DNA of 63,894 nucleotides, filler included, from Octopus bimaculoides (Eukaryota): assembly GCF_001194135.2 (NCBI RefSeq). It is 7 parts of 6 records of this genome, joined end to end, with 100 filler letters (N's around TTAATTAATTAA, not from the genome) between each part and the next. Parts side by side here need not be neighbours in the genome. Positions count along the whole stretch, not along the records: positions 19,005 to 38,795 come from NC_069007.1; 6 more parts are not named here. One strand, given 5' to 3'. Made by a program: the position numbers and the translations under genes. This document shows, piece after piece, positions 22,726-35,286 of the stretch; the stretch's first letter is position 1, and each line of letters opens with the position of its first letter. The notes below the pieces were generated by a model that was not told the origin of the DNA, did not search any database, and saw nothing but the letters and a program-made list of their open reading frames with translations.

Positions 22726-23155
22726 GGCGGTGAGCTGGCAGAAACGGTAGCACGCCGGGCGAAATGTTTAGCGGTATTTCGTCTGATGCTACGTTCTGAG
22801 TTCAAATTCTACCGAGGTCGGTTTTGCTTTTCATCTTTTCGGGGTCCATAATTTAAGTACCAGTTATGCACTGGGGTCGATGTAATCGGCTTAATCCCTT
22901 TGTCTGTCTTTGTTTGTCCCCTCTATGTTTAGCCCCCTGTGGGCAATAAAGAAATAAGAAACGTTAGCACGCCGGGCGAAATGCTCAGCGGTATTTCGTC
23001 TGCCGTTACGTTCTGAGTTCAAATTCCGCCGAGGTCGACTTTGCCTTCCATCCTTTTGGGGTCGATAAATTAAGTACAAGTTGCGTACTGGGGTCGATCT
23101 AATCGACTGGCTCCCTCCCTACAAATTTCGGGCCCTGTGCCCTGAGTGGAAAAGA
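22726..23155 (+). mobile_element. Tandem dimer of tRNA-derived SINE family B
   Basis: Two copies of GTTAGCACGCCGGGCGAAATG...GAGTTCAAATTC(C/T)...GGGGTCGAT...AAGTACCAG; the second lacks the first nucleotides of the head. Confidence 0.85.
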
Positions 23156-24733: not shown

Positions 24734-26134
24734 TTACAGTTTTTCGGAAATAAAATGGCCATGTAATGTGTAAGGGACTGTCGTAGGAAGTTCCGCTTGA
24801 CTTATCAAGGTCATGGTTTTAGCATCTATTACATAAAGATAATGTTTATTTGTTGCTGCGTCTGCCCCCGGAAGTACCAAGACACCATCGTCCTCTTCTT
24901 TCGCATTTGGTGTCGGAACGAAAATAGCTTCGCTCACGTACACACCGGTCTTGTAATAGTATTTGTCTCTTCCTTTCTCACAGACATCCTTCTTGATTAA
25001 AGCTATACTTGTGATATTATCGTGTATTACTCTTAAGGCCACGCCATATAGAAAACAGTAAGGTTTACTTCGGTAATTTTCGTTAATCGTCGGAAAATCA
25101 AACCGAGTAAGAAATGTTTCGTTTGAAGGTCTGGAAAATGAATGAACTTTGCTTGTCTTGTTTTCAATGTTGAAAATATATCGTCTGATCTGAGCTGAAA
25201 ACGGAATATTTTTTCTTTTGGCTGGATTCACCATATTCTCTACAAACATAGATTTTACAAATAACGGGTCATCGTAACCAACTGCATCTACAATAATATT
25301 TCCATTTTCATCCTCGTAGGCATTTGCGTGGTGCATGATAAAGCTGTTTTCTGTTTTCATATTTATAACCTCGCCAGTCTTCAAGTTGATTATGTTAACG
25401 TCAATCGGTTTATCTCCATACCAATCCATTCCATCGAACGGGTGCATTTCTTTCAGAAATTTTGGAATGTTCAAATACATCGGATGACAGAACAATATCC
25501 CATAATGCTCAGTCGTAGAAAAAGAATGCATGTAGGGTATTTTGTCAACGGGTACATTTGCAATGACTTCTCGCTTCTGTGCCGTATGAATTCGAATAAA
25601 CTTCACTGAACTTTTCACCCAAGGAATCAAGCTCAACGTTGACAGGAATAACAAAGAGTTATTTGTACCAAATTCGGGCAGAGGGTGGGCCGTGGATATG
25701 AGGTTTAAGAAGCCAATGGATGACTTCTGGGGAACTGGCGCCTCACATGCAGAAATAGTCTGTAAAGTAGTACAATTGAATTCATACATTTTCCAGTAAT
25801 CTGTGAGTGCAAAACAACCCTTGTCGTCTTGGCCGTTTGCTTTGGCCGTTTTGTAATAAGAATAGACGTTGACGTTCATGTTATCCAAACCGTTTATGAT
25901 GGACTTAAATTGTTTCCATCGACTGAAAGGTGGTTCAACGCCAATAAACGTGAGATACGGAGCAATATCGTCTGTGGCGATGCTTTTATTGTAAGTCGAA
26001 CTCTTTACAAACTTCGTTGAAAAAAGAGCTGTGTTATTTCCGGTTATCTTCCAGCTCGACAGTTTGGCAAAAGAATCGAACAAGTGCAGAAAATGCCTTT
26101 TGCCACTTTCAAACTGACCAAAACCATTTCGTAT
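24734..26134 (-). CDS. Carotenoid cleavage oxygenase (RPE65/BCO/NinaB superfamily), second (terminal) coding exon
   Basis: Acceptor ttcattgcAG|ATACGA at 26135/26134, phase 0; 466 codons plus TAA. Motifs: IRNGFG, HLFDS, DNMNVN, TAH, MHSF, MHHANAYED, FDFPTIN, SEAIF, EDDGVL, LHGHF (four Fe-ligand His present). AATAAA on the minus strand near 24406-24416. Confidence 0.95.
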   Translation of the reverse strand: MRNGFGQFESGKRHFLHLFDSFAKLSSWKITGNNTALFSTKFVKSSTYNKSIATDDIAPYLTFIGVEPPFSRWKQFKSIINGLDNMNVNVYSYYKTAKANGQDDKGCFALTDYWKMYEFNCTTLQTISACEAPVPQKSSIGFLNLISTAHPLPEFGTNNSLLFLSTLSLIPWVKSSVKFIRIHTAQKREVIANVPVDKIPYMHSFSTTEHYGILFCHPMYLNIPKFLKEMHPFDGMDWYGDKPIDVNIINLKTGEVINMKTENSFIMHHANAYEDENGNIIVDAVGYDDPLFVKSMFVENMVNPAKRKNIPFSAQIRRYIFNIENKTSKVHSFSRPSNETFLTRFDFPTINENYRSKPYCFLYGVALRVIHDNITSIALIKKDVCEKGRDKYYYKTGVYVSEAIFVPTPNAKEEDDGVLVLPGADAATNKHYLYVIDAKTMTLISQAELPTTVPYTLHGHFISEKL

Positions 26135-26184
26135 CTGCAATGAAATATTTAGGTGAGAGAAATGGCAGGAATATATTTCATATT

Positions 26185-26700
26185 TTATCTTGTATCTTTG
26201 GTTTGTTTCAGTCATTGGACTGCGGCCATGCTGGGGCACCGCCTTAAAGGGTCAAGTCGATCAAATCAACATCAGGACTTTTTTTTTTAATAAAGAGGGG
26301 AGTAGTACTTATTTCGTCGGTCACTTTGTCAGTAGTGCTAAGTAACAGGGACATAAATAAGGCAACACCGGTTGTCAAGCAGAGAAGGGATACAAACACA
26401 CAAAGGGATACAAACGCACAAGGGATACAAAGATGCATACACATACACATACACACACACATACACACACACATACACACACACATACACACACATACAC
26501 ACGCACATGCACACACGCACGCACACACATGCATATACGACGGGCTCCTACACAGTCTCCGTCTACCAAATTCGTTCACAGGACATTGGTCAGCCTGGTG
26601 GCTTTAGTAGAAGACTCTTGTCCAATGTGCCGCGATGTGGGACCGAACCGAAAACAACGCGGTTGCAAAGCGAGGTTCTTAACCACACAACCATATTTGC
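26185..26700 (-). mobile_element. Diverged SINE family A filling the oxygenase intron
   Basis: Tail, (CA/TACACA)n tract and head recognisable. It supplies the spurious first 35 aa of the 501-aa track ORF. Confidence 0.75.
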
Positions 26701-26777
26701 GTCAAATCAACAAAGTACTATACAAATGATCGCTTAATCTGCTAGATATGGCTCCCAAATCTCCGTCAAATCACATC

Positions 26778-26782
<5 letters not shown>

Positions 26783-26858
<76 letters not shown>
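26783..26858 (+). repeat. (GATA)n microsatellite next to the oxygenase splice donor
   Basis: Pure (TAGA)n run ending about 18 nt from the GT donor. The window also holds many (TA)n, (CA)n, (TACA)n, (TAA)n, (CAT)n and (CTA)n tracts. Confidence 0.95.
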
Positions 26859-26859
<1 letters not shown>

Positions 26860-26876
26860 TTAATATAGACACTAAC

Positions 26877-27068
26877 CAAATTTCCTTTTAACCATTCCGG
26901 AATTTTCCGATCGAAATAAATGGGAAAGTCATTGAATTCTTTGAGATTTGTCGTATATAAAGTGCTGAAAGTGTCTGCGAGTGCACTGGAAGCGGCGGTG
27001 AGAGATGACACTGGTAGCCCACAGACTGATAACAGTAGAGAGGCAAAGAGGGTCGCTGGAACACACAT
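26877..27068 (-). CDS. Carotenoid cleavage oxygenase, first coding exon with putative signal peptide
   Basis: ATG at 27068 in context acaATG; encodes MCVPATLFASLLLSVCGLPVSSLTAASSALADTF...IPEWLKGNL; donor TTG|GTTAGT at 26877/26876, phase 0. Splicing rebuilds the family motif IPxWLxGxLxRNG. Intron 26135-26876. Confidence 0.9.
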
Positions 27069-27081
27069 TGTTGGTCCTTTC

Positions 27082-27112
27082 CTGAGAAATGAAAGAAAGT
27101 GAATTCGATTAG
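27082..27112 (-). promoter_or_regulatory. Splice acceptor 13 nt upstream of the oxygenase ATG, implying an upstream probably non-coding exon
   Basis: Minus strand reads gCTAATcgaattcactttctttcatttctcAG|GAAAGGACCAACAATG: branch-point-like CTAAT, pyrimidine tract, CAG. Confidence 0.65.
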
Positions 27113-27207
27113 CAATGGTCATACCATATCTATCTGCCGGCTCGCCACCTGTATAATAATAATAATAACGATAATGATAGCAATAATAATGATAATAATA
27201 ATAATAA

Positions 27208-27675
27208 GGATATGCCAATACACACAGATAGAGAAATTAAGGCCAATAGGCCAGATATAGTTGTCAGAGATCATAAAGAAAAAAAATGCTTTCTAATTGA
27301 TGTATCAATACCAGCAGATGACAACGTTTCCCTAGAAGAAATGGAAAAACTTTCAAGCTACGAAGACCTGGAAATAGAGGTAACTCGAATGTGGAATCTA
27401 AAAACAGAAACAATTCCTCTCATAGAAAGCACCTTAGGTATAATAAAAAAAATATTCAGACAAATACATAACAAAAACACCAGGACTTACAAATATATAT
27501 AACATACAGAAAATTGCACTACTGGGCACTGCACACATCCTACGCAAAACACTTTCAATACAGTAACCATAAGAGCATCACAGTAAACCACAGTACATAC
27601 CCAAGGCAAACAGAGCTGCGCTCAGTAGTGAAGTGAAAGCACGTTATAAAAATAAAACTACTGAATAATAATAAT
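27208..27675 (+). mobile_element. 5'-truncated R4/Dong-like RLE non-LTR retrotransposon (endonuclease end plus 3' UTR) in an (AAT)n tract
   Basis: NRPDIVV...CFLIDVSIP...EKLSSYEDL (PD-(D/E)xK type), then frameshifted IQKIALLGTAHILRK*; (AAT)n on both sides. Confidence 0.85.
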
Positions 27676-28230: not shown

Positions 28231-28637
28231 ATACGGAGACAAGGAGAAAAACACGGAGAAAAAAAAATTGAATAGTGTTCAGTAAAAAAGGATGATAAAG
28301 GAGGTTTACAAAAGTGGAAAAGTTCAAAAGTTTTTTAGACGTCGTGATATATTGAAGCGATTTCCAATCAGAAGATGGGTCCAGTGTAATCTGTGGGTAG
28401 GAGAGGTGCAGCCGGAGGGTATAAAGTTCAGAATCAAACGTACGTTTTAAAGTACGTAATACATATCTTTGCGTAAATATGTGTATGTGCACGTGCGTGT
28501 GTGTGCGAGATATTTCTATAAAAAACTGTGCGAGAGATTACAAAAGAAAAGAAAGACCTGGAGATATGAAGGGAGAACATAAGGTTATAATACATAGATT
28601 TCTACGTTATTATTATTACTATTATAATTATTATTAA

Positions 28638-28848
28638 AGGCGGCGTGTTGGCAGAGTCGTTAGCACGCCGGGGTAAACGCTTAACGGTACTTCGCTCGTC
28701 GCTAAGTTCTGAGTTCAAATTCCGCCGAAGTCGATTTTGTTTTTCATCCTTTCGGGGTCGATAAATTAAGTACATGTTGAGTACTGAGGTCGATATAATT
28801 GAGTTACTCCTCTCCAAAATTTCAGGCCTTGTGCCTGTCGTAGAAAGG
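28638..28848 (+). mobile_element. SINE family B, full length
   Basis: GGCGGCGTGTTGGCAGAGTCGTTAGCAC...GAGTTCAAATTCC...AGAAAGGAT. Other copies at about 6285-6487(+), 6510-6720(-), 6750-6965(-), 7215-7350(-), 13100-13330(-), 30287-30495(+), 34056-34235(+), 38340-38490(-), 45330-45533(-), 52095-52210(-), 52540-52690(-), 60115-60250(-) and 63860-63894(+). Confidence 0.85.
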
Positions 28849-28861
28849 ATTTTTTTCCCCC

Positions 28862-29482
28862 TTTTTATTACGGGTTTTGTGGGACCCCCTGGAGTCTTGC
28901 ATGCACAGCGGGCACACAACCTACAGCCTACGGTTAGCCATTCTTTTCAGCTCTCTAATACTTCCCTAATTATTCTGGTCGTTCCAAGGAGGCAAACCTT
29001 TTGTAACAGTTCTACATGGAACTCTATTCCGATTTCCTTTATATTCCTCTTGATTCCTTCTGATACTGTTCCCAAAGACACAACAATAATTGGTACTGTC
29101 TTCACTTTCTTCATTTTCCATAGCCAAGCTATTTCACACTTCAGAGGATTGTATCTATCTATCTTGTCCACCACCACTAGGTACGGTCTGTTATGCTCTA
29201 GCACCTGATCTGTTTGGATTGGTTAAATCCCAGAGGATTTTGCTAATCTCCAACTCTGCCATTCTCTTCGGTTTGTGCTCATACCACATCTTGTCCCTCT
29301 CTAGCCCCCACTTTTTACACATTTCCCAATGTAGTACTTTCGCTACCTGGTCCTGTCGCCACAACGTGTAGTGGCTTTGGGCTAGTCTAAGACATTCGTT
29401 CGTGACATGGGCAATGGTTTCATCCACTCTACTGCAGATGCGGCACAGCAGAGACATTTGCTCGTTCCTAAGGTTGACCCTC
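28862..29482 (-). mobile_element. Degenerate R4/Dong-like element: CCHC knuckle and RLE domain with internal deletion
   Basis: CRICSRVDETIAHVTNEC, LHWEMCKKWGL, KILWD, HNRPYLVVVDK, LLQKVCLLGTTRIIREVL; frameshifts present. Confidence 0.85.
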
Positions 29483-29509
29483 CAGTTCGTGGCCAAAGGT
29501 CGGTCTTGC

Positions 29510-29800: not shown

Positions 29801-31026
29801 AGAAATTCTCCCAGGACATTGGAGAGTTTAGTAAGTACCCAGCCACCCAACAAAAAAAAAACCTTTCTAGGAAAACCCTTCTCCACTCCCCCATCGATCA
29901 AACAGATGACTGTGTTAACAGTCATCTCTGAAAACCAAAAGTACGTAGCTCCATTTTTTTTTTTTCATGGCTTCAATGCGTTTGATCCTAATTTTACTCA
30001 ATCAGATCAGAAAAAAATTATCAACAAACTAATAAACAACAGCCGACTGCATTTTATCTTGACGTCAAAAATTCATAACTTATAATTCATAAATCTCATT
30101 TAAAATCATGAAGAGAACGTTGCAGTAGAATTATTAGAAATTCTGGTCAATGAACAGACGGTGATTTTCTCAAAATAAAAGTCACGGTATAAGACTATCA
30201 TCGTCAACGAGATAAGAAAAACACAAAGCAATTACGAAGTACTTGCATAGAAAGCGACCATCATCATCATCATTCTTGTTATTAAAGCGGCGAGCTGGCA
30301 GAATCGTTGGCACTCCGGATGGAATGCTTAACGGTATTTCGCCCGACTTTGTTTTGGGTTCAAATTCCGTCTCGGTCGACTTTACCTTTCATCCTTTCAG
30401 GGTCGATAAAATAAGTACCAGTTACGCACTGGAGTCGATGTAACCGACTAGCGCCATCCCCAAAATTTTAGGACTTGTACCTTTAGTAGAAAGAGTTATT
30501 ATCATTATTATTAGTAGTAGTAGTAGTAGTTTTTCAGTCTGCGTTGTCAGAGCAAAGGCCCGTGCGCTAAAACATGAGGGGACTAAAGCCGTCCGATGGG
30601 TCCGAACGGGGGAAACACGACGTGGCAACAAAACCACGATCGAGTCTTTGACGGATCTGGACGGGCGCGTGCTACATGGTTCTGAGCAGGTGTGTACGGT
30701 TGAATAAGGGTCGTTTAAGGACGTCGAACGAAATACCCATGTTTCCAGAGGTGAATTATTAAAACCCCAAAGAATTCCTCTCAACACATGGCTATGATGC
30801 TCCCCCACCACTTCTGCTTATGATCAGAGATGCACATATCGTCAGCCACTAAGAGACATGCTCAACTGGTTAAGGTCAAACAACTGACAAACAAATCTAT
30901 GGTATTGAGCAGAATATTTGCTCTATCCCATCTTTTATACCAGGACAAAACAATGTACACGATAACACTTCCAATCAATTAAGATCAGAAGCCATGAGAG
31001 CCACTGCCTGGTACTGCATCAGGGCA

Positions 31027-31058: not shown

Positions 31059-31889
31059 CATTACCTTTGCACAGCTTCTAACGCTGGAGATGTACTACAG
31101 TGTCAGCTGTTCACTACCAGTGAACTAAGGTAACACCTCTTATTTTTCAAGCNNNNNNNNNNNNNNNNNNNNNNNNNNNNNNNNNNNNNNNNNNNNNNNN
31201 NNNNNNNNNNNNNNNNNNNNNNNNNNNNNNNNNNNNNNNNNNNNNNNNNNNNNNNNNNNNNNNNNNNNNNNNNNNNNNNNNNNNNNNNNNNNNNNNNNNN
31301 NNNNNNNNNNNNNNNNNNNNNNNNNNNNNNNNNNNNNNNNNNNNNNNNNNNNNNNNNNNNNNNNNNNNNNNNNNNNNNNNNNNNNNNNNNNNNNNNNNNN
31401 NNNNNNNNNNNNNNNNNNNNNNNNNNNNNNNNNNNNNNNNNNNNNNNNNNNNNNNNNNNNNNNNNNNNNNNNNNNNNNNNNNNNNNNNNNNNNNNNNNNN
31501 NNNNNNNNNNNNNNNNNNNNNNNNNNNNNNNNNNNNNNNNCCTGGCTATATTGTCGTGGCGTCTCATATTCCTTCGGGGCTGGTGGCATACATTGGCCGG
31601 TAATATGCCATACTGTTTCACCATTTTGTCAACAGATTCTGCACTTATCACTTTCTGCTGTGTTGTCTATTCTGTATATTACGTAGTTTGTTCTTAGTGT
31701 TTGCTCTTGGATAGCACAGATTAGAGCCTCCGTTTCCGGTTTTAAATCACTTTTAGTCATCCACTGCCATCTTTTTTCTCTGTCTGTCTTATCTTCAACA
31801 TCCCTATAAAATTGACCATGCATTCTTTTCTTTACCCACTTGTTTTCAGTTTTATTCGTTTTCAATTTCTTGCATGGTGCTTTATCTTT

Positions 31890-31890
<1 letters not shown>
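31028..31890 (-). mobile_element. R4/Dong-like element fragment (gap 31153-31540) with (TAA)n tail
   Basis: KRMHGQFYR...WQWMTKSDLKPETEALICAIQEQTLRTNY...DKCRIC; 3' UTR ends in (TAA)n near 31030-31060. Confidence 0.8.
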
Positions 31891-31923
<33 letters not shown>

Positions 31924-33920: not shown

Positions 33921-35286
33921 ATTATTATTATTGTTGTTGTTGTTATAAAACCACAAAAAGCATTGTGAAATTTTCCTGGTCGAATATTAATTTATTTCGC
34001 CGACCTCGACAGAGTTTGAACTCAGAACATAAAGACAGACGAAATACCGCTGAGCGAAATGCTTAGCAATATTTCGTCTGTCTTTATGTTCTGAGTTCAA
34101 ATTCCGCCGAGGTCGACTTTGCCTTTCATCCTTTCGGGGGTCGATGAATTAAGTACCAGTTGCGTACTGGAGTCGATCTAATCGACTGACTCCCTCTCCA
34201 AAAATTTCGGGCCTTGTGCCTGGAGTAGAAAAAATATCAAACGTGCAGTATTAAGAAAGAATTAGGCTAAGGGAAATCACTCGTCACTCTTCAAAACATT
34301 TGCACGAGTGATTTCCCTTGTAATTCAGATATATTTCGTTTTTTTGGTAATTCGTTTAACAGATGTTACGAGATGAATGGTCAGGCATATTTCTGGGGAC
34401 GCAGACGGTTTCGGGAAGCCATTTAATGGACTTTGCTGCGCCTATAACTCTAAGCCCAGTCAAAGCTTCGCAGGACGAAGGCCCCACAAAATTTCGACAA
34501 CTTCTTTATTTTTCCTCGCAACGTACCAGAAAGCACGTTCTGCTGAGCGACAATTCTTCCAGCTTTACGTTCTGAGTCCAAATTCTTCCGAGGTTAACTC
34601 TACCTTCTTATTACGGGGTCCATAGAAAATGTAACGGATGAGCAGTGGGGTCGATCTAATTGCCTGCAAGCTTCTCAACCACACAACTTGTTGAATGTCC
34701 TTCCTCGTTCGCAACCCCATGTCATTTGTCCCCCGTTCCCAAATCTTCACAAACACCTTTATCGTAGAGAATTCCATTCATGATTTTAGAATTTCCTAGC
34801 ATATCCTCACATGGTTTTCTGCAACCAAACTCTAAACCAGTTCCCTAGGCCGTTCCTCTAAGATTTGGCAGTTTCGCACAATGGTAATGATAGAGTAAGC
34901 ACCAGACTTAAAAGTCAGTTCGGAGATCAATTTCGTTCGCTGAATGCTTCAGGACAGAGCTCCAGTATGGCCACACTCCAATGGCTGAAATGTGTAAAAG
35001 AATTTAAAAAAAGATAGGCAGACAGATAATGTATGCACACACACAAACACTGCATGGATGTATGTATGTGTGTATGCATGTATGTGTGTATATATGTATG
35101 TATGTATATACGTGTATGTATATGTGTATTTATGCACGTATGTATGTGTGTATGTATGTATGTGTATGTACGTACGTATTTATGTATGTATGTATGCATG
35201 TACGTATGCATGTATGTGTGTATATATGTATTTATGTGTATGTGTGTATGTATGTATATATGTGTATGTATTTATGCATTTATGGA

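What the first reader, a model, noticed from the sequence alone, without database searches (positions are those of the whole stretch)
24734..27122. Carotenoid cleavage oxygenase with an apparent signal peptide and seven N-glycosylation sequons: a possible secretory-pathway enzyme
Seen: the spliced protein starts MCVPATLFASLLLSVCGLPVSSLTAASSALA-DTF, a hydrophobic core with small-residue cleavage-like sites. It carries the sequons NNT, NKS, NCT, NNS, NKT, NET and NIT. Known: characterised animal members (BCO1, RPE65, NinaB) are cytosolic or membrane-peripheral and BCO2 is mitochondrial. Inference: this could be a lumenal, lysosomal or secreted Fe(II) oxygenase acting on dietary carotenoids or other alkenes. 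An in-frame upstream ATG at 27122 would add MTIANRIHFLSFLRKGPT (basic, no acidic residues), which looks like a mitochondrial presequence if that intron end is retained. Signal-peptide-bearing relatives may already exist in other molluscs, so novelty must be checked.
Basis: partly seen in the sequence, partly recalled or inferred. Interest (0 to 1): 0.8.

Follow-up and report, generated by a model that had tools for sequence, protein, structure and literature searches.

The report
Octopus secreted-type carotenoid oxygenase (BCOL)

Summary
On the minus strand, two coding exons (27068-26877 and 26134-24734) splice into an intact 530-aa protein. It has an uncharged hydrophobic N-terminal leader and the seven listed N-X-S/T sequons. 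An in-frame ATG at 27122 would add MTIANRIHFLSFLRKGPT.

The protein is identical to XP_014781013.1 (Octopus bimaculoides). It has the RPE65/CCO domain, all four iron-binding His and a confident seven-bladed propeller model. It lacks the PDPC(K) palmitoylation motif. Its best solved relative is lancelet BCOLg.

The secretory reading is supported but already published. Poliakov et al. 2017, Table 1, lists this accession with TargetP SP 0.965, localisation "S". Uppal et al. 2020 showed that lancelet BCOLg is partly secreted and refer to a "secreted BCOL subfamily".

Caveats:
- Seven sequons is no more than composition predicts (P = 0.19). Only N97, N113 and the 435-437 region are positionally conserved.
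- The proposed ALA|D cleavage site is not conserved among Octopus species.
- The 18-aa extension shows no amphipathic signal of a mitochondrial presequence.

Small additions from this work:
- a BCOL-specific invariant Cys424/Cys449 pair, a candidate disulfide;
- a two-coding-exon gene structure shared from octopus to amphioxus.

Verdict: a real, functional gene that is already known. Low interest.

The parts
26877..27068 (-). Coding exon 1 (64 codons). It encodes the signal-peptide-like leader plus the first ~33 residues of the mature protein, and ends at donor TTG|GTTAGT.
   Evidence: The spliced product is identical to XP_014781013.1.
26976..27068 (-). Codons 1-31, MCVPATLFASLLLSVCGLPVSSLTAASSALA: the hydrophobic, uncharged leader.
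   Evidence: hydrophobicity and -3/-1 candidate sites. (pLDDT < 50 for residues 1-27). (dN 0.21 vs dS 0.12 against O. vulgaris: fast-evolving but hydrophobic character kept). Published TargetP SP 0.965.
26135..26876 (-). The single intron within the coding region (phase 0, directly before IRNG). It contains (ATAG)20 at 26778-26859, a SINE-like repeat and a (CA/CATACA)n tract at 26436-26530.
   Evidence: The intron position is shared with Lottia, Mytilus and Branchiostoma.
24734..26134 (-). Coding exon 2 (466 codons plus stop). It encodes the whole catalytic beta-propeller.
   Evidence: dN/dS of the mature part against O. vulgaris is 0.11.
27069..27122 (-). In-frame upstream extension of 18 codons, from the ATG at 27122 (MTIANRIHFLSFLRKGPT). 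Its status is unresolved: alternative start, 5'UTR or intron end.
   Evidence: 548-aa O. vulgaris isoform. (only 2-3 differences in the 66 nt from ~27134 down to the start ATG at 27068, which contain these codons).
27082..27112 (-). Splice-acceptor-like site between the two ATGs: branch-point-like CTAAT (27112-27108), a pyrimidine tract, and CAG|G with AG at 27083-27082. If it is used, the ATG at 27122 is spliced out and 27068 becomes the first ATG of the exon.
   Evidence: Read directly from the sequence. Conserved in O. vulgaris and O. sinensis. Its use is not shown.
25685..25687 (-). His214 codon, iron ligand 1. The other three ligands are His267 (25526-25528), His332 (25331-25333) and His522 (24761-24763).
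   Evidence: All four His are invariant in 69/69 BCOL-like and 12/12 other CCO hits.
26036..26038 (-). Asn97 codon, the best-conserved sequon (NNT here, mostly NGS/NGT elsewhere). The second conserved sequon is Asn113 (25988-25990).
   Evidence: 45/66 and 30/69. The sequon at N113 is also present in lancelet BCOLg as YNRS (alignment).
24980..25057 (-). Cys424 (25055-25057) to Cys449 (24980-24982): a BCOL-specific invariant cysteine pair flanking a beta-hairpin. The hairpin loop carries the NIT437 sequon.
   Evidence: 68/69 in BCOL, 0/12 in other CCOs. (strands 425-430 and 442-447). A disulfide is inferred, not shown.
26726..26740 (-). VEPPF (residues 130-134), which replaces the PDPC(K) palmitoylation motif of canonical metazoan BCO/RPE65/NinaB. 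Note: these coordinates are wrong. They lie inside the intron and were given by mistake. Residues 130-134 are encoded at 25925-25939 in exon 2.
   Evidence: alignment. PDPC is present in the NinaB/BCO-type hits and absent from all BCOL-like hits. The correct coordinates are 25925-25939.

Best explanation
The locus is the Octopus bimaculoides BCO-like (BCOL) carotenoid cleavage oxygenase gene, product XP_014781013.1. It is a non-haem Fe(II) dioxygenase with the CCO seven-bladed beta-propeller. It differs from BCO1, BCO2, RPE65 and NinaB in having an N-terminal ER signal peptide and in lacking the PDPC(K) palmitoylation motif.

Most likely mechanism (inferred):
1. The leader directs co-translational entry into the ER and is cleaved somewhere between residues ~22 and 31.
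2. The propeller folds in the lumen, probably with a Cys424-Cys449 disulfide.
3. It is probably N-glycosylated at least at the conserved N97 and N113 sites.
4. The enzyme is secreted or stays in a lumenal compartment and cleaves carotenoid or apocarotenoid double bonds there. This follows lancelet BCOLg, which cleaves beta-carotene and lycopene and prefers cis isomers.

Shown here: gene model, sequence identity to the accession, catalytic residues, fold, leader properties, purifying selection, and family-wide conservation of the leader. Shown by others: the TargetP prediction for this protein, and the secretion and activity of the lancelet homologue. Not shown for the octopus enzyme: cleavage site, glycosylation, disulfide, substrate and tissue.
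For: - Gene model and sequons.
- Pfam RPE65, 1.1e-78, covering residues 55-526.
- Best PDB sequence hit is 9plv, lancelet BCOLg (308 bits, E = 7e-91). By comparison NdCCD scores 166 bits, NinaB 113, BCMO 107 and RPE65 99.
- Exact identity to XP_014781013.1.
- That accession is in Table 1 of Poliakov 2017 with SP 0.965 and localisation 'S'.
- BCOLg is partly secreted from HEK293F cells and is not palmitoylated.
- BCOLg cleaves beta-carotene and lycopene.
- Hydrophobic leaders in 32/39 full-length homologues.
- Two spliced transcript contigs of cephalopod-like homologues have in-frame stops upstream of the Met that precedes the leader.
- The four His ligands are invariant; the PDPC motif is absent; the Cys pair is BCOL-specific.
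- AF2 model with pLDDT 89.9 and a disordered leader.
- Foldseek matches NdCCD, NinaB and RPE65 with TM 0.8-0.93.
- dN/dS of the mature part is 0.11.
Against: - No signal-peptide predictor could be run here. The leader was assessed by hydrophobicity, charge and the -3/-1 rule, plus the published TargetP value.
- The leader has no basic residue in its n-region.
- The sequon count is not above chance.
- No octopus transcript or protein data were available, so the 5' structure of the mRNA and the true start codon are unverified.
- Secretion has been shown only for a lancelet paralogue overexpressed in human cells.
Confidence: 0.88

Rival explanations
1. The leader acts as an uncleaved signal anchor or as an ER-retention device. 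The enzyme would then be a lumenally oriented, membrane-tethered ER or endomembrane protein rather than a secreted one.
For: - Poliakov 2017 wrote only that such peptides possibly indicate trafficking to ER membranes.
- The region after the hydrophobic core is long and has many weak -3/-1 candidates but no single conserved AXA site.
- Only 'a significant fraction' of lancelet BCOLg was secreted.
- With the 548-aa start, the n-region would be 22 residues long and basic, which favours anchor behaviour (inference).
Against: - The hydrophobic core is only ~14 residues (ATLFASLLLSVCGL) and contains Ser, Cys and Gly. That is short for a transmembrane anchor.
- VSS|L is conserved in three Octopus species.
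- There is no KDEL-type C-terminus; the protein ends ...ISEKL.
- The leader evolves fast (dN 0.21), as cleaved signal peptides do.
Confidence: 0.08
2. Translation starts at the ATG at 27122. The 18-residue basic extension then acts as a mitochondrial presequence, giving mitochondrial or dual targeting, as with BCO2.
For: - The extension has net charge +3 and no acidic residue.
- Its codons lie in a very well conserved 66-nt block (2-3 differences).
- O. vulgaris is annotated with a 548-aa isoform.
Against: - Its helical hydrophobic moment is no greater than that of shuffles (0.54 vs 0.49 +/- 0.14).
- A conserved, strong acceptor-like site lies between the two ATGs, so the conservation may reflect splicing signals instead.
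- Both RefSeq models (O. bimaculoides and O. sinensis) start at the second ATG.
- A 2-codon uORF (ATG GTA TGA, 27127-27119) overlaps the upstream ATG.
- Homologues in other molluscs and amphioxus start directly with a short signal peptide.
- The hydrophobic core would still follow the extension.
Confidence: 0.03
3. The hydrophobic stretch is internal because an unannotated upstream coding exon splices into the acceptor-like site at 27082. The protein would then be cytosolic and the sequons irrelevant.
For: - The reading frame stays open across the acceptor-like site and upstream of it.
- No transcript data were available here.
Against: - Full-length homologues in gastropod, bivalve and amphioxus genomes have exactly two coding exons, with the Met and leader at the start of the first.
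- Transcript contigs of two cephalopod-like homologues have in-frame stops just upstream of the initiator Met.
- No conserved coding-like block was found upstream in comparisons with O. vulgaris and O. sinensis.
Confidence: 0.01

Closest known systems
Lancelet (Branchiostoma floridae) BCOLg, XP_002601288.1, PDB 9plv
   Same: - Same clade: 308 bits, alignable over residues 32-526.
- Shares the signal-peptide-type N-terminus, the absence of PDPC(K), the four His ligands, the Cys424/Cys449 equivalents (YC..YG and NVC) and the YN[KR]S sequon.
- Another amphioxus BCOL gene has the same two-coding-exon structure.
   Different: - It comes from a different phylum and has roughly 35-40% identity.
- Most sequons are not shared.
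- Activity and secretion have been measured for BCOLg only.
Canonical metazoan CCOs: BCO1, BCO2, RPE65, NinaB
   Same: Same superfamily, fold and 4-His iron centre.
   Different: - They carry the PDPC(K) motif and have no signal peptide. They are cytosolic or membrane-peripheral, and BCO2 is mitochondrial.
- Their genes have many exons: scallop BCO2 has 12 and ant NinaB at least 10 coding exons. This gene has 2.
- Sequence similarity is only 99-113 bits.
Nitrosotalea devanaterra archaeal CCD (NdCCD, PDB 6vcf)
   Same: - It is the second-best sequence match (166 bits) and the best structural match in the fold library (TM 0.93 normalised to the target).
- Poliakov 2017 also place archaeal CCOs as the closest prokaryotic clade.
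   Different: It is a prokaryotic, leaderless protein of 472 aa. It lacks the BCOL Cys pair and the conserved sequons (alignment).

Membership tests
Carotenoid cleavage oxygenase superfamily (Pfam PF03055, RPE65) | A significant full-length match to the family profile. | tested here: met
   E = 1.1e-78, 265.9 bits against a cutoff of 27. Residues 55-526 match profile positions 20-468 of 469.
Carotenoid cleavage oxygenase superfamily (Pfam PF03055, RPE65) | Four conserved His that ligate the Fe(II), plus second-sphere Glu residues. | tested here: met
   H214, H267, H332 and H522 are invariant in 81/81 aligned sequences. E466 is invariant in the 69 BCOL-like sequences. E338 and E273 are present in this protein.
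Carotenoid cleavage oxygenase superfamily (Pfam PF03055, RPE65) | Seven-bladed beta-propeller fold. | tested here: met
   AF2 model with pLDDT 89.9 and pTM 0.88. Foldseek gives probability 1.00 to NdCCD, NinaB, RPE65 and ACO, with TM 0.75-0.93.
Carotenoid cleavage oxygenase superfamily (Pfam PF03055, RPE65) | Oxidative cleavage of a carotenoid, apocarotenoid or stilbenoid double bond. | not testable with these tools
   Only the lancelet homologue BCOLg has been assayed.
BCOL clade (Poliakov et al. 2017) | Groups with BCOL sequences rather than with BCO1, BCO2, RPE65 or NinaB. | tested here: met
   BCOLg scores 308 bits, against no more than 113 bits for canonical metazoan CCOs. The accession itself appears in the paper's BCOL table. 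No new tree was built.
BCOL clade (Poliakov et al. 2017) | Absence of the PDPC(K) motif. | tested here: met
   VEPPFS occupies that position. There is no Cys there in any of the 69 BCOL-like sequences, whereas PDPC is present in the NinaB/BCO-type hits.
BCOL clade (Poliakov et al. 2017) | N-terminal signal peptide. | tested here: met
   Heuristic tests only: hydrophobic core, no charge, -3/-1 candidate sites, disordered in AF2. Published TargetP SP is 0.965 for this accession. SignalP was not available.
BCOL clade (Poliakov et al. 2017) | Actual secretion or lumenal location. | not testable with these tools
   Shown for lancelet BCOLg in HEK293F cells only.
BCO2 (mitochondrial carotenoid 9',10'-oxygenase) | Mitochondrial presequence, PDPCK motif and a multi-exon (12-exon) gene. 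| tested here: not met
   - Published mTP score of 0.024 for the 530-aa form.
- The 18-aa extension has no amphipathic signal.
- There is no PDPCK motif.
- The gene has two coding exons, against 12 in scallop BCO2.

The most novel reading that the evidence does not exclude
BCOL enzymes may be obligately extracellular or lumenal oxygenases whose gene arose from an intronless CCO copy that captured a separate leader exon. The copy could have been a retroposed gene or a horizontally acquired archaeal-type gene.

Three observations point this way:
- a single phase-0 intron, directly after the leader exon, is conserved from octopus to amphioxus;
- the protein is closer to an archaeal CCD than to canonical animal BCOs;
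- the invariant Cys424/Cys449 pair and the conserved N97 and N113 glycosylation sites are specific to the clade.

In Octopus, the conserved upstream ATG could additionally give a second N-terminus.
Probability: 0.12. Interest if true: 0.45.

Novelty: already known. Interest (0 to 1): 0.14.

Why it matters
A secreted iron-dependent carotenoid oxygenase is unusual among animal CCOs. It bears on how marine invertebrates handle dietary carotenoids outside cells. That point was made for the BCOL clade in 2017-2020, with this octopus protein in the published table, and a lancelet BCOL crystal structure has since been deposited (9plv). For the scan, this means a correctly read but already catalogued gene.

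The additions from this work are small and untested:
- a clade-specific Cys pair;
- two to three positionally conserved sequons;
- a conserved gene layout of one leader exon and one body exon.

They would help in designing a glycosylation, disulfide and secretion experiment on a molluscan BCOL.

Tried and rejected
- Sequon count as evidence. Rejected: shuffles give 4.8 +/- 2.0 against 7 observed, and BCOL homologues as a group are only weakly above shuffles (mean z 0.55).
- ALA|D as the cleavage site. Not conserved in the other two Octopus species.
- Mitochondrial presequence reading of the 18-aa extension. Hydrophobic moment equals that of shuffles.
- Looking for a conserved upstream exon by blastn against the O. 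vulgaris and O. sinensis loci. This found only collinear blocks at background identity (74-89%), repeats and a rearranged TE-like block. Alignability stops at ~27137.
- Using an octopod Logan contig (L008) to see the 5' mRNA structure. The contig turned out to be genomic, with intron plus exon 2.
- Testing whether the BCOL intron position is shared with a canonical CCO gene. Ant NinaB has no intron there. Because insects have lost many introns, this is inconclusive. The aphid NinaB and Lineus proteins were not on record.
- Rfam scan of the piece: nothing.
- Pfam on neighbouring ORFs: only a weak zf-RVT hit.
- The 2020 BBA review on metazoan CCOs was not held. No paper describing PDB 9plv was found.
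- KDEL-type or PTS1 C-terminal signals: absent; the protein ends ...ISEKL.
Full report
**1. What is in the sequence**

The finding sits on the minus strand of the piece. Exon 1 runs from the ATG at 27068 to 26877 and ends at a TTG|GTTAGT donor. Exon 2 starts at 26134, after ...ttcattgcag, and runs to the TAA stop at 24736-24734.

Both exons are multiples of three, so the intron is phase 0. The spliced ORF is 530 aa.

The in-frame ATG at 27122 is real and would add MTIANRIHFLSFLRKGPT. The 742-bp intron holds an (ATAG)20 microsatellite, a SINE-like element and a CA-rich tract.

**2. Identity**

- The protein matches Pfam RPE65 (PF03055) end to end at E = 1.1e-78.
- An exact-sequence look-up shows it is XP_014781013.1 / A0A0L8GHE4 of Octopus bimaculoides.
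- Orthologues in O. vulgaris and O. sinensis are 530 aa and 92% identical. O. vulgaris also has an annotated 548-aa isoform.
- Among solved structures, the best sequence match by far is 9plv, 'Beta-carotene oxygenase like g (BCOLg)' of amphioxus, at 308 bits.
- The archaeal Nitrosotalea CCD follows at 166 bits. NinaB, C. elegans BCMO and RPE65 score 99-113 bits.

**3. Is it a working enzyme gene?**

- The four iron-binding histidines (H214, H267, H332, H522) are invariant across 69 BCOL-like and 12 other CCO sequences. Second-sphere glutamates are present.
- An AlphaFold2 model built on 48 sequences has mean pLDDT 89.9 and pTM 0.88.
- Foldseek matches it to NdCCD, NinaB, RPE65, BCMO and ACO with probability 1.00 and TM 0.75-0.93.
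- Against O. vulgaris, the mature part has dN = 0.028 and dS = 0.264, a ratio of 0.11. The gene is under purifying selection.

**4. The leader**

- Residues 1-31 contain no charged residue.
- The hydrophobic core is ATLFASLLLSVCGL, with a maximum 9-residue Kyte-Doolittle mean of 2.5.
- AlphaFold leaves residues 1-27 disordered, and order begins at about residue 31.
- Between Octopus species the leader changes quickly but stays hydrophobic: 15-16 differences in 93 nt, dN 0.21 against dS 0.12. This is usual for cleaved signal peptides.
The other two species have PELT|D and PEFT|D. VSS|L after residue 22 is conserved in all three. The exact site remains open.
- Across the family, 32 of 39 homologues whose models include the N-terminus have a comparable leader. 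The exceptions look like mis-started models. Canonical CCO hits do not have one.
- Two spliced transcript contigs of cephalopod-like homologues (54% and 46% identity) have in-frame stop codons shortly upstream of the Met that precedes the leader. In those relatives the hydrophobic stretch is therefore truly N-terminal.

**5. The sequons**

Seven sequons is not more than composition predicts. Shuffles give 4.8 +/- 2.0, P = 0.19. Position is more informative:

- N97 aligns with a sequon in 45 of 66 homologues, mostly G-N-G-S/T.
- N113 aligns with a sequon in 30 of 69, including YNRS in amphioxus BCOLg.
- The 435-437 loop carries a sequon in 24-30 of 69.

In the model, all seven Asn lie in turns, loops or a surface helix. 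The other four sites are confined to octopods and close relatives.

**6. Other clade features**

- The PDPC(K) palmitoylation motif of canonical metazoan CCOs is replaced by VEPPF, with no cysteine. This matches what defines BCOL in the literature.
- Cys424 and Cys449 are invariant in 68 of 69 BCOL-like sequences and absent from all 12 other CCO hits.
- In the model they sit at the same end of an antiparallel hairpin (strands 425-430 and 442-447). The loop of that hairpin carries the N437 sequon.
- I infer a disulfide, which would fit a secretory-pathway protein.

**7. The upstream ATG**

Alignment with O. vulgaris and O. sinensis shows that alignable sequence begins abruptly at about 27137. 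The 66 nt upstream of the 27068 ATG differ at only 2-3 positions, less than synonymous sites do. Two readings fit this:

- *An alternative start.* O. vulgaris is annotated with MAIANRIHFLSFLRKGPT + the 530-aa protein.
- *The end of a 5'UTR intron.* The block contains a textbook acceptor, CTAAT...cactttctttcatttctCAG|G, with AG at 27083-27082.

Both RefSeq models start at the second ATG. A two-codon uORF overlaps the upstream ATG.

The extension is basic, but its helical hydrophobic moment is not above that of shuffles. The same hydrophobic core would follow it. I therefore give the mitochondrial reading low weight. Transcript data are needed to settle this.

**8. Comparison with what is known**

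- Poliakov et al. 2017 (Sci Rep 7:13192, PMC5643517) defined the BCOL clade, noted the missing PDPC(K) motif and tabulated TargetP predictions.
- The row 'XP_014781013.1 Octopus 530 mTP 0.024 SP 0.965 S' is this protein.
- Uppal et al. 2020 (Molecules 25:1942, PMC7221588) showed that BCOLg is not palmitoylated and that a significant fraction is secreted from HEK293F cells. They speak of 'the secreted BCOL subfamily'.
- A BCOLg structure is deposited as 9plv.

**9. Gene structure (side observation)**

One intron, directly before [IV]RNG, separates a leader exon from a single ~465-codon body exon. This holds in three Octopus species, Lottia, Mytilus and Branchiostoma lanceolatum.

By contrast, scallop BCO2 has 12 exons like vertebrate BCO2 (PMC11012205), and an ant NinaB gene has at least 10 coding exons with none at this position. 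The 2017 paper does not contain the words 'intron' or 'exon'.

This could reflect 3'-biased intron loss, retroposition or an old horizontal acquisition. I could not discriminate between these.

**10. Surroundings**

- The rest of the piece is repeat-rich, with many CA/TA microsatellites and assembly gaps.
- SINE-like copies lie at about 28810-28621, 30449-30259, 34193-34048 and 23108-22957.
- LINE-tail-like ORFs occur at 28947-29496 (weak zf-RVT hit) and 31629-31900.
- A TE-like block at 27208-27675 abuts the conserved exon-1 block. In O. vulgaris the same block lies 3.9 kb further upstream and is inverted.
- No Rfam family and no second protein-coding gene were found.

**11. Verdict**

The novelty class is 'already known'. 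Interest is low (0.14).

Noticed in passing
window 26135-26876; loci L001-L005: BCOL genes have only two coding exons. A single phase-0 intron directly before [IV]RNG is conserved in three Octopus species, Lottia, Mytilus and Branchiostoma lanceolatum. Canonical scallop BCO2 has 12 exons and ant NinaB at least 10. The BCOL paper searched here does not mention this.
   Followed up: partly
window 24980-25057 (Cys424, Cys449): The cysteine pair is invariant in 68/69 BCOL-like proteins and absent from all 12 non-BCOL CCO hits. In the AF2 model it flanks a beta-hairpin. It is a candidate disulfide specific to the secreted clade.
   Followed up: partly
window 27069-27137: The ~66 nt upstream of the start codon are more conserved between Octopus species (2-3 differences) than synonymous sites of the gene. 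The block contains an in-frame ATG (27122), a 2-codon uORF (27127-27119), GATA-like motifs (CAGATAGATATGG) and a strong acceptor-like site (AG at 27083-27082). Alignability with the other species ends abruptly at ~27137.
   Followed up: partly
window 27208-27675: A TE-like block carries the ORF at 27212-27502 (+), which has the RPDIVV...IDV motif typical of retroelement tails. It lies directly upstream of the gene. The orthologous block is ~3.9 kb further upstream and inverted in O. vulgaris (L001 5660-6131) and O. sinensis (L002 5494-5960). This could be a local rearrangement, an independent insertion or an assembly difference.
   Followed up: partly
window 28621-28810, 30259-30449, 34048-34193, 22957-23108; intron 26498-26693: Multiple copies of a SINE-like repeat of ~150-190 bp. 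Each matches several places in the O. vulgaris and O. sinensis loci. LINE-tail-like ORFs occur at 28947-29496 (-) with a weak zf-RVT hit (E = 0.004) and at ~31629-31900 (-).
   Followed up: no
proteins P0087 and P0091 (metagenomic CCO hits): Two distant, probably bacterial CCO homologues also start with hydrophobic leaders. P0087 has a lipobox-like ...VFMTGC. Exported CCOs may therefore exist outside animals too.
   Followed up: no
proteins P0005, P0022, P0048, P0063 and others: Many database models of molluscan BCOL genes start with a spurious M...FQ[IV]RNG. The 'FQ' is the translated end of the intron (ttt cag). Exon 1, and with it the signal peptide, has been missed in those annotations.
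   Followed up: no
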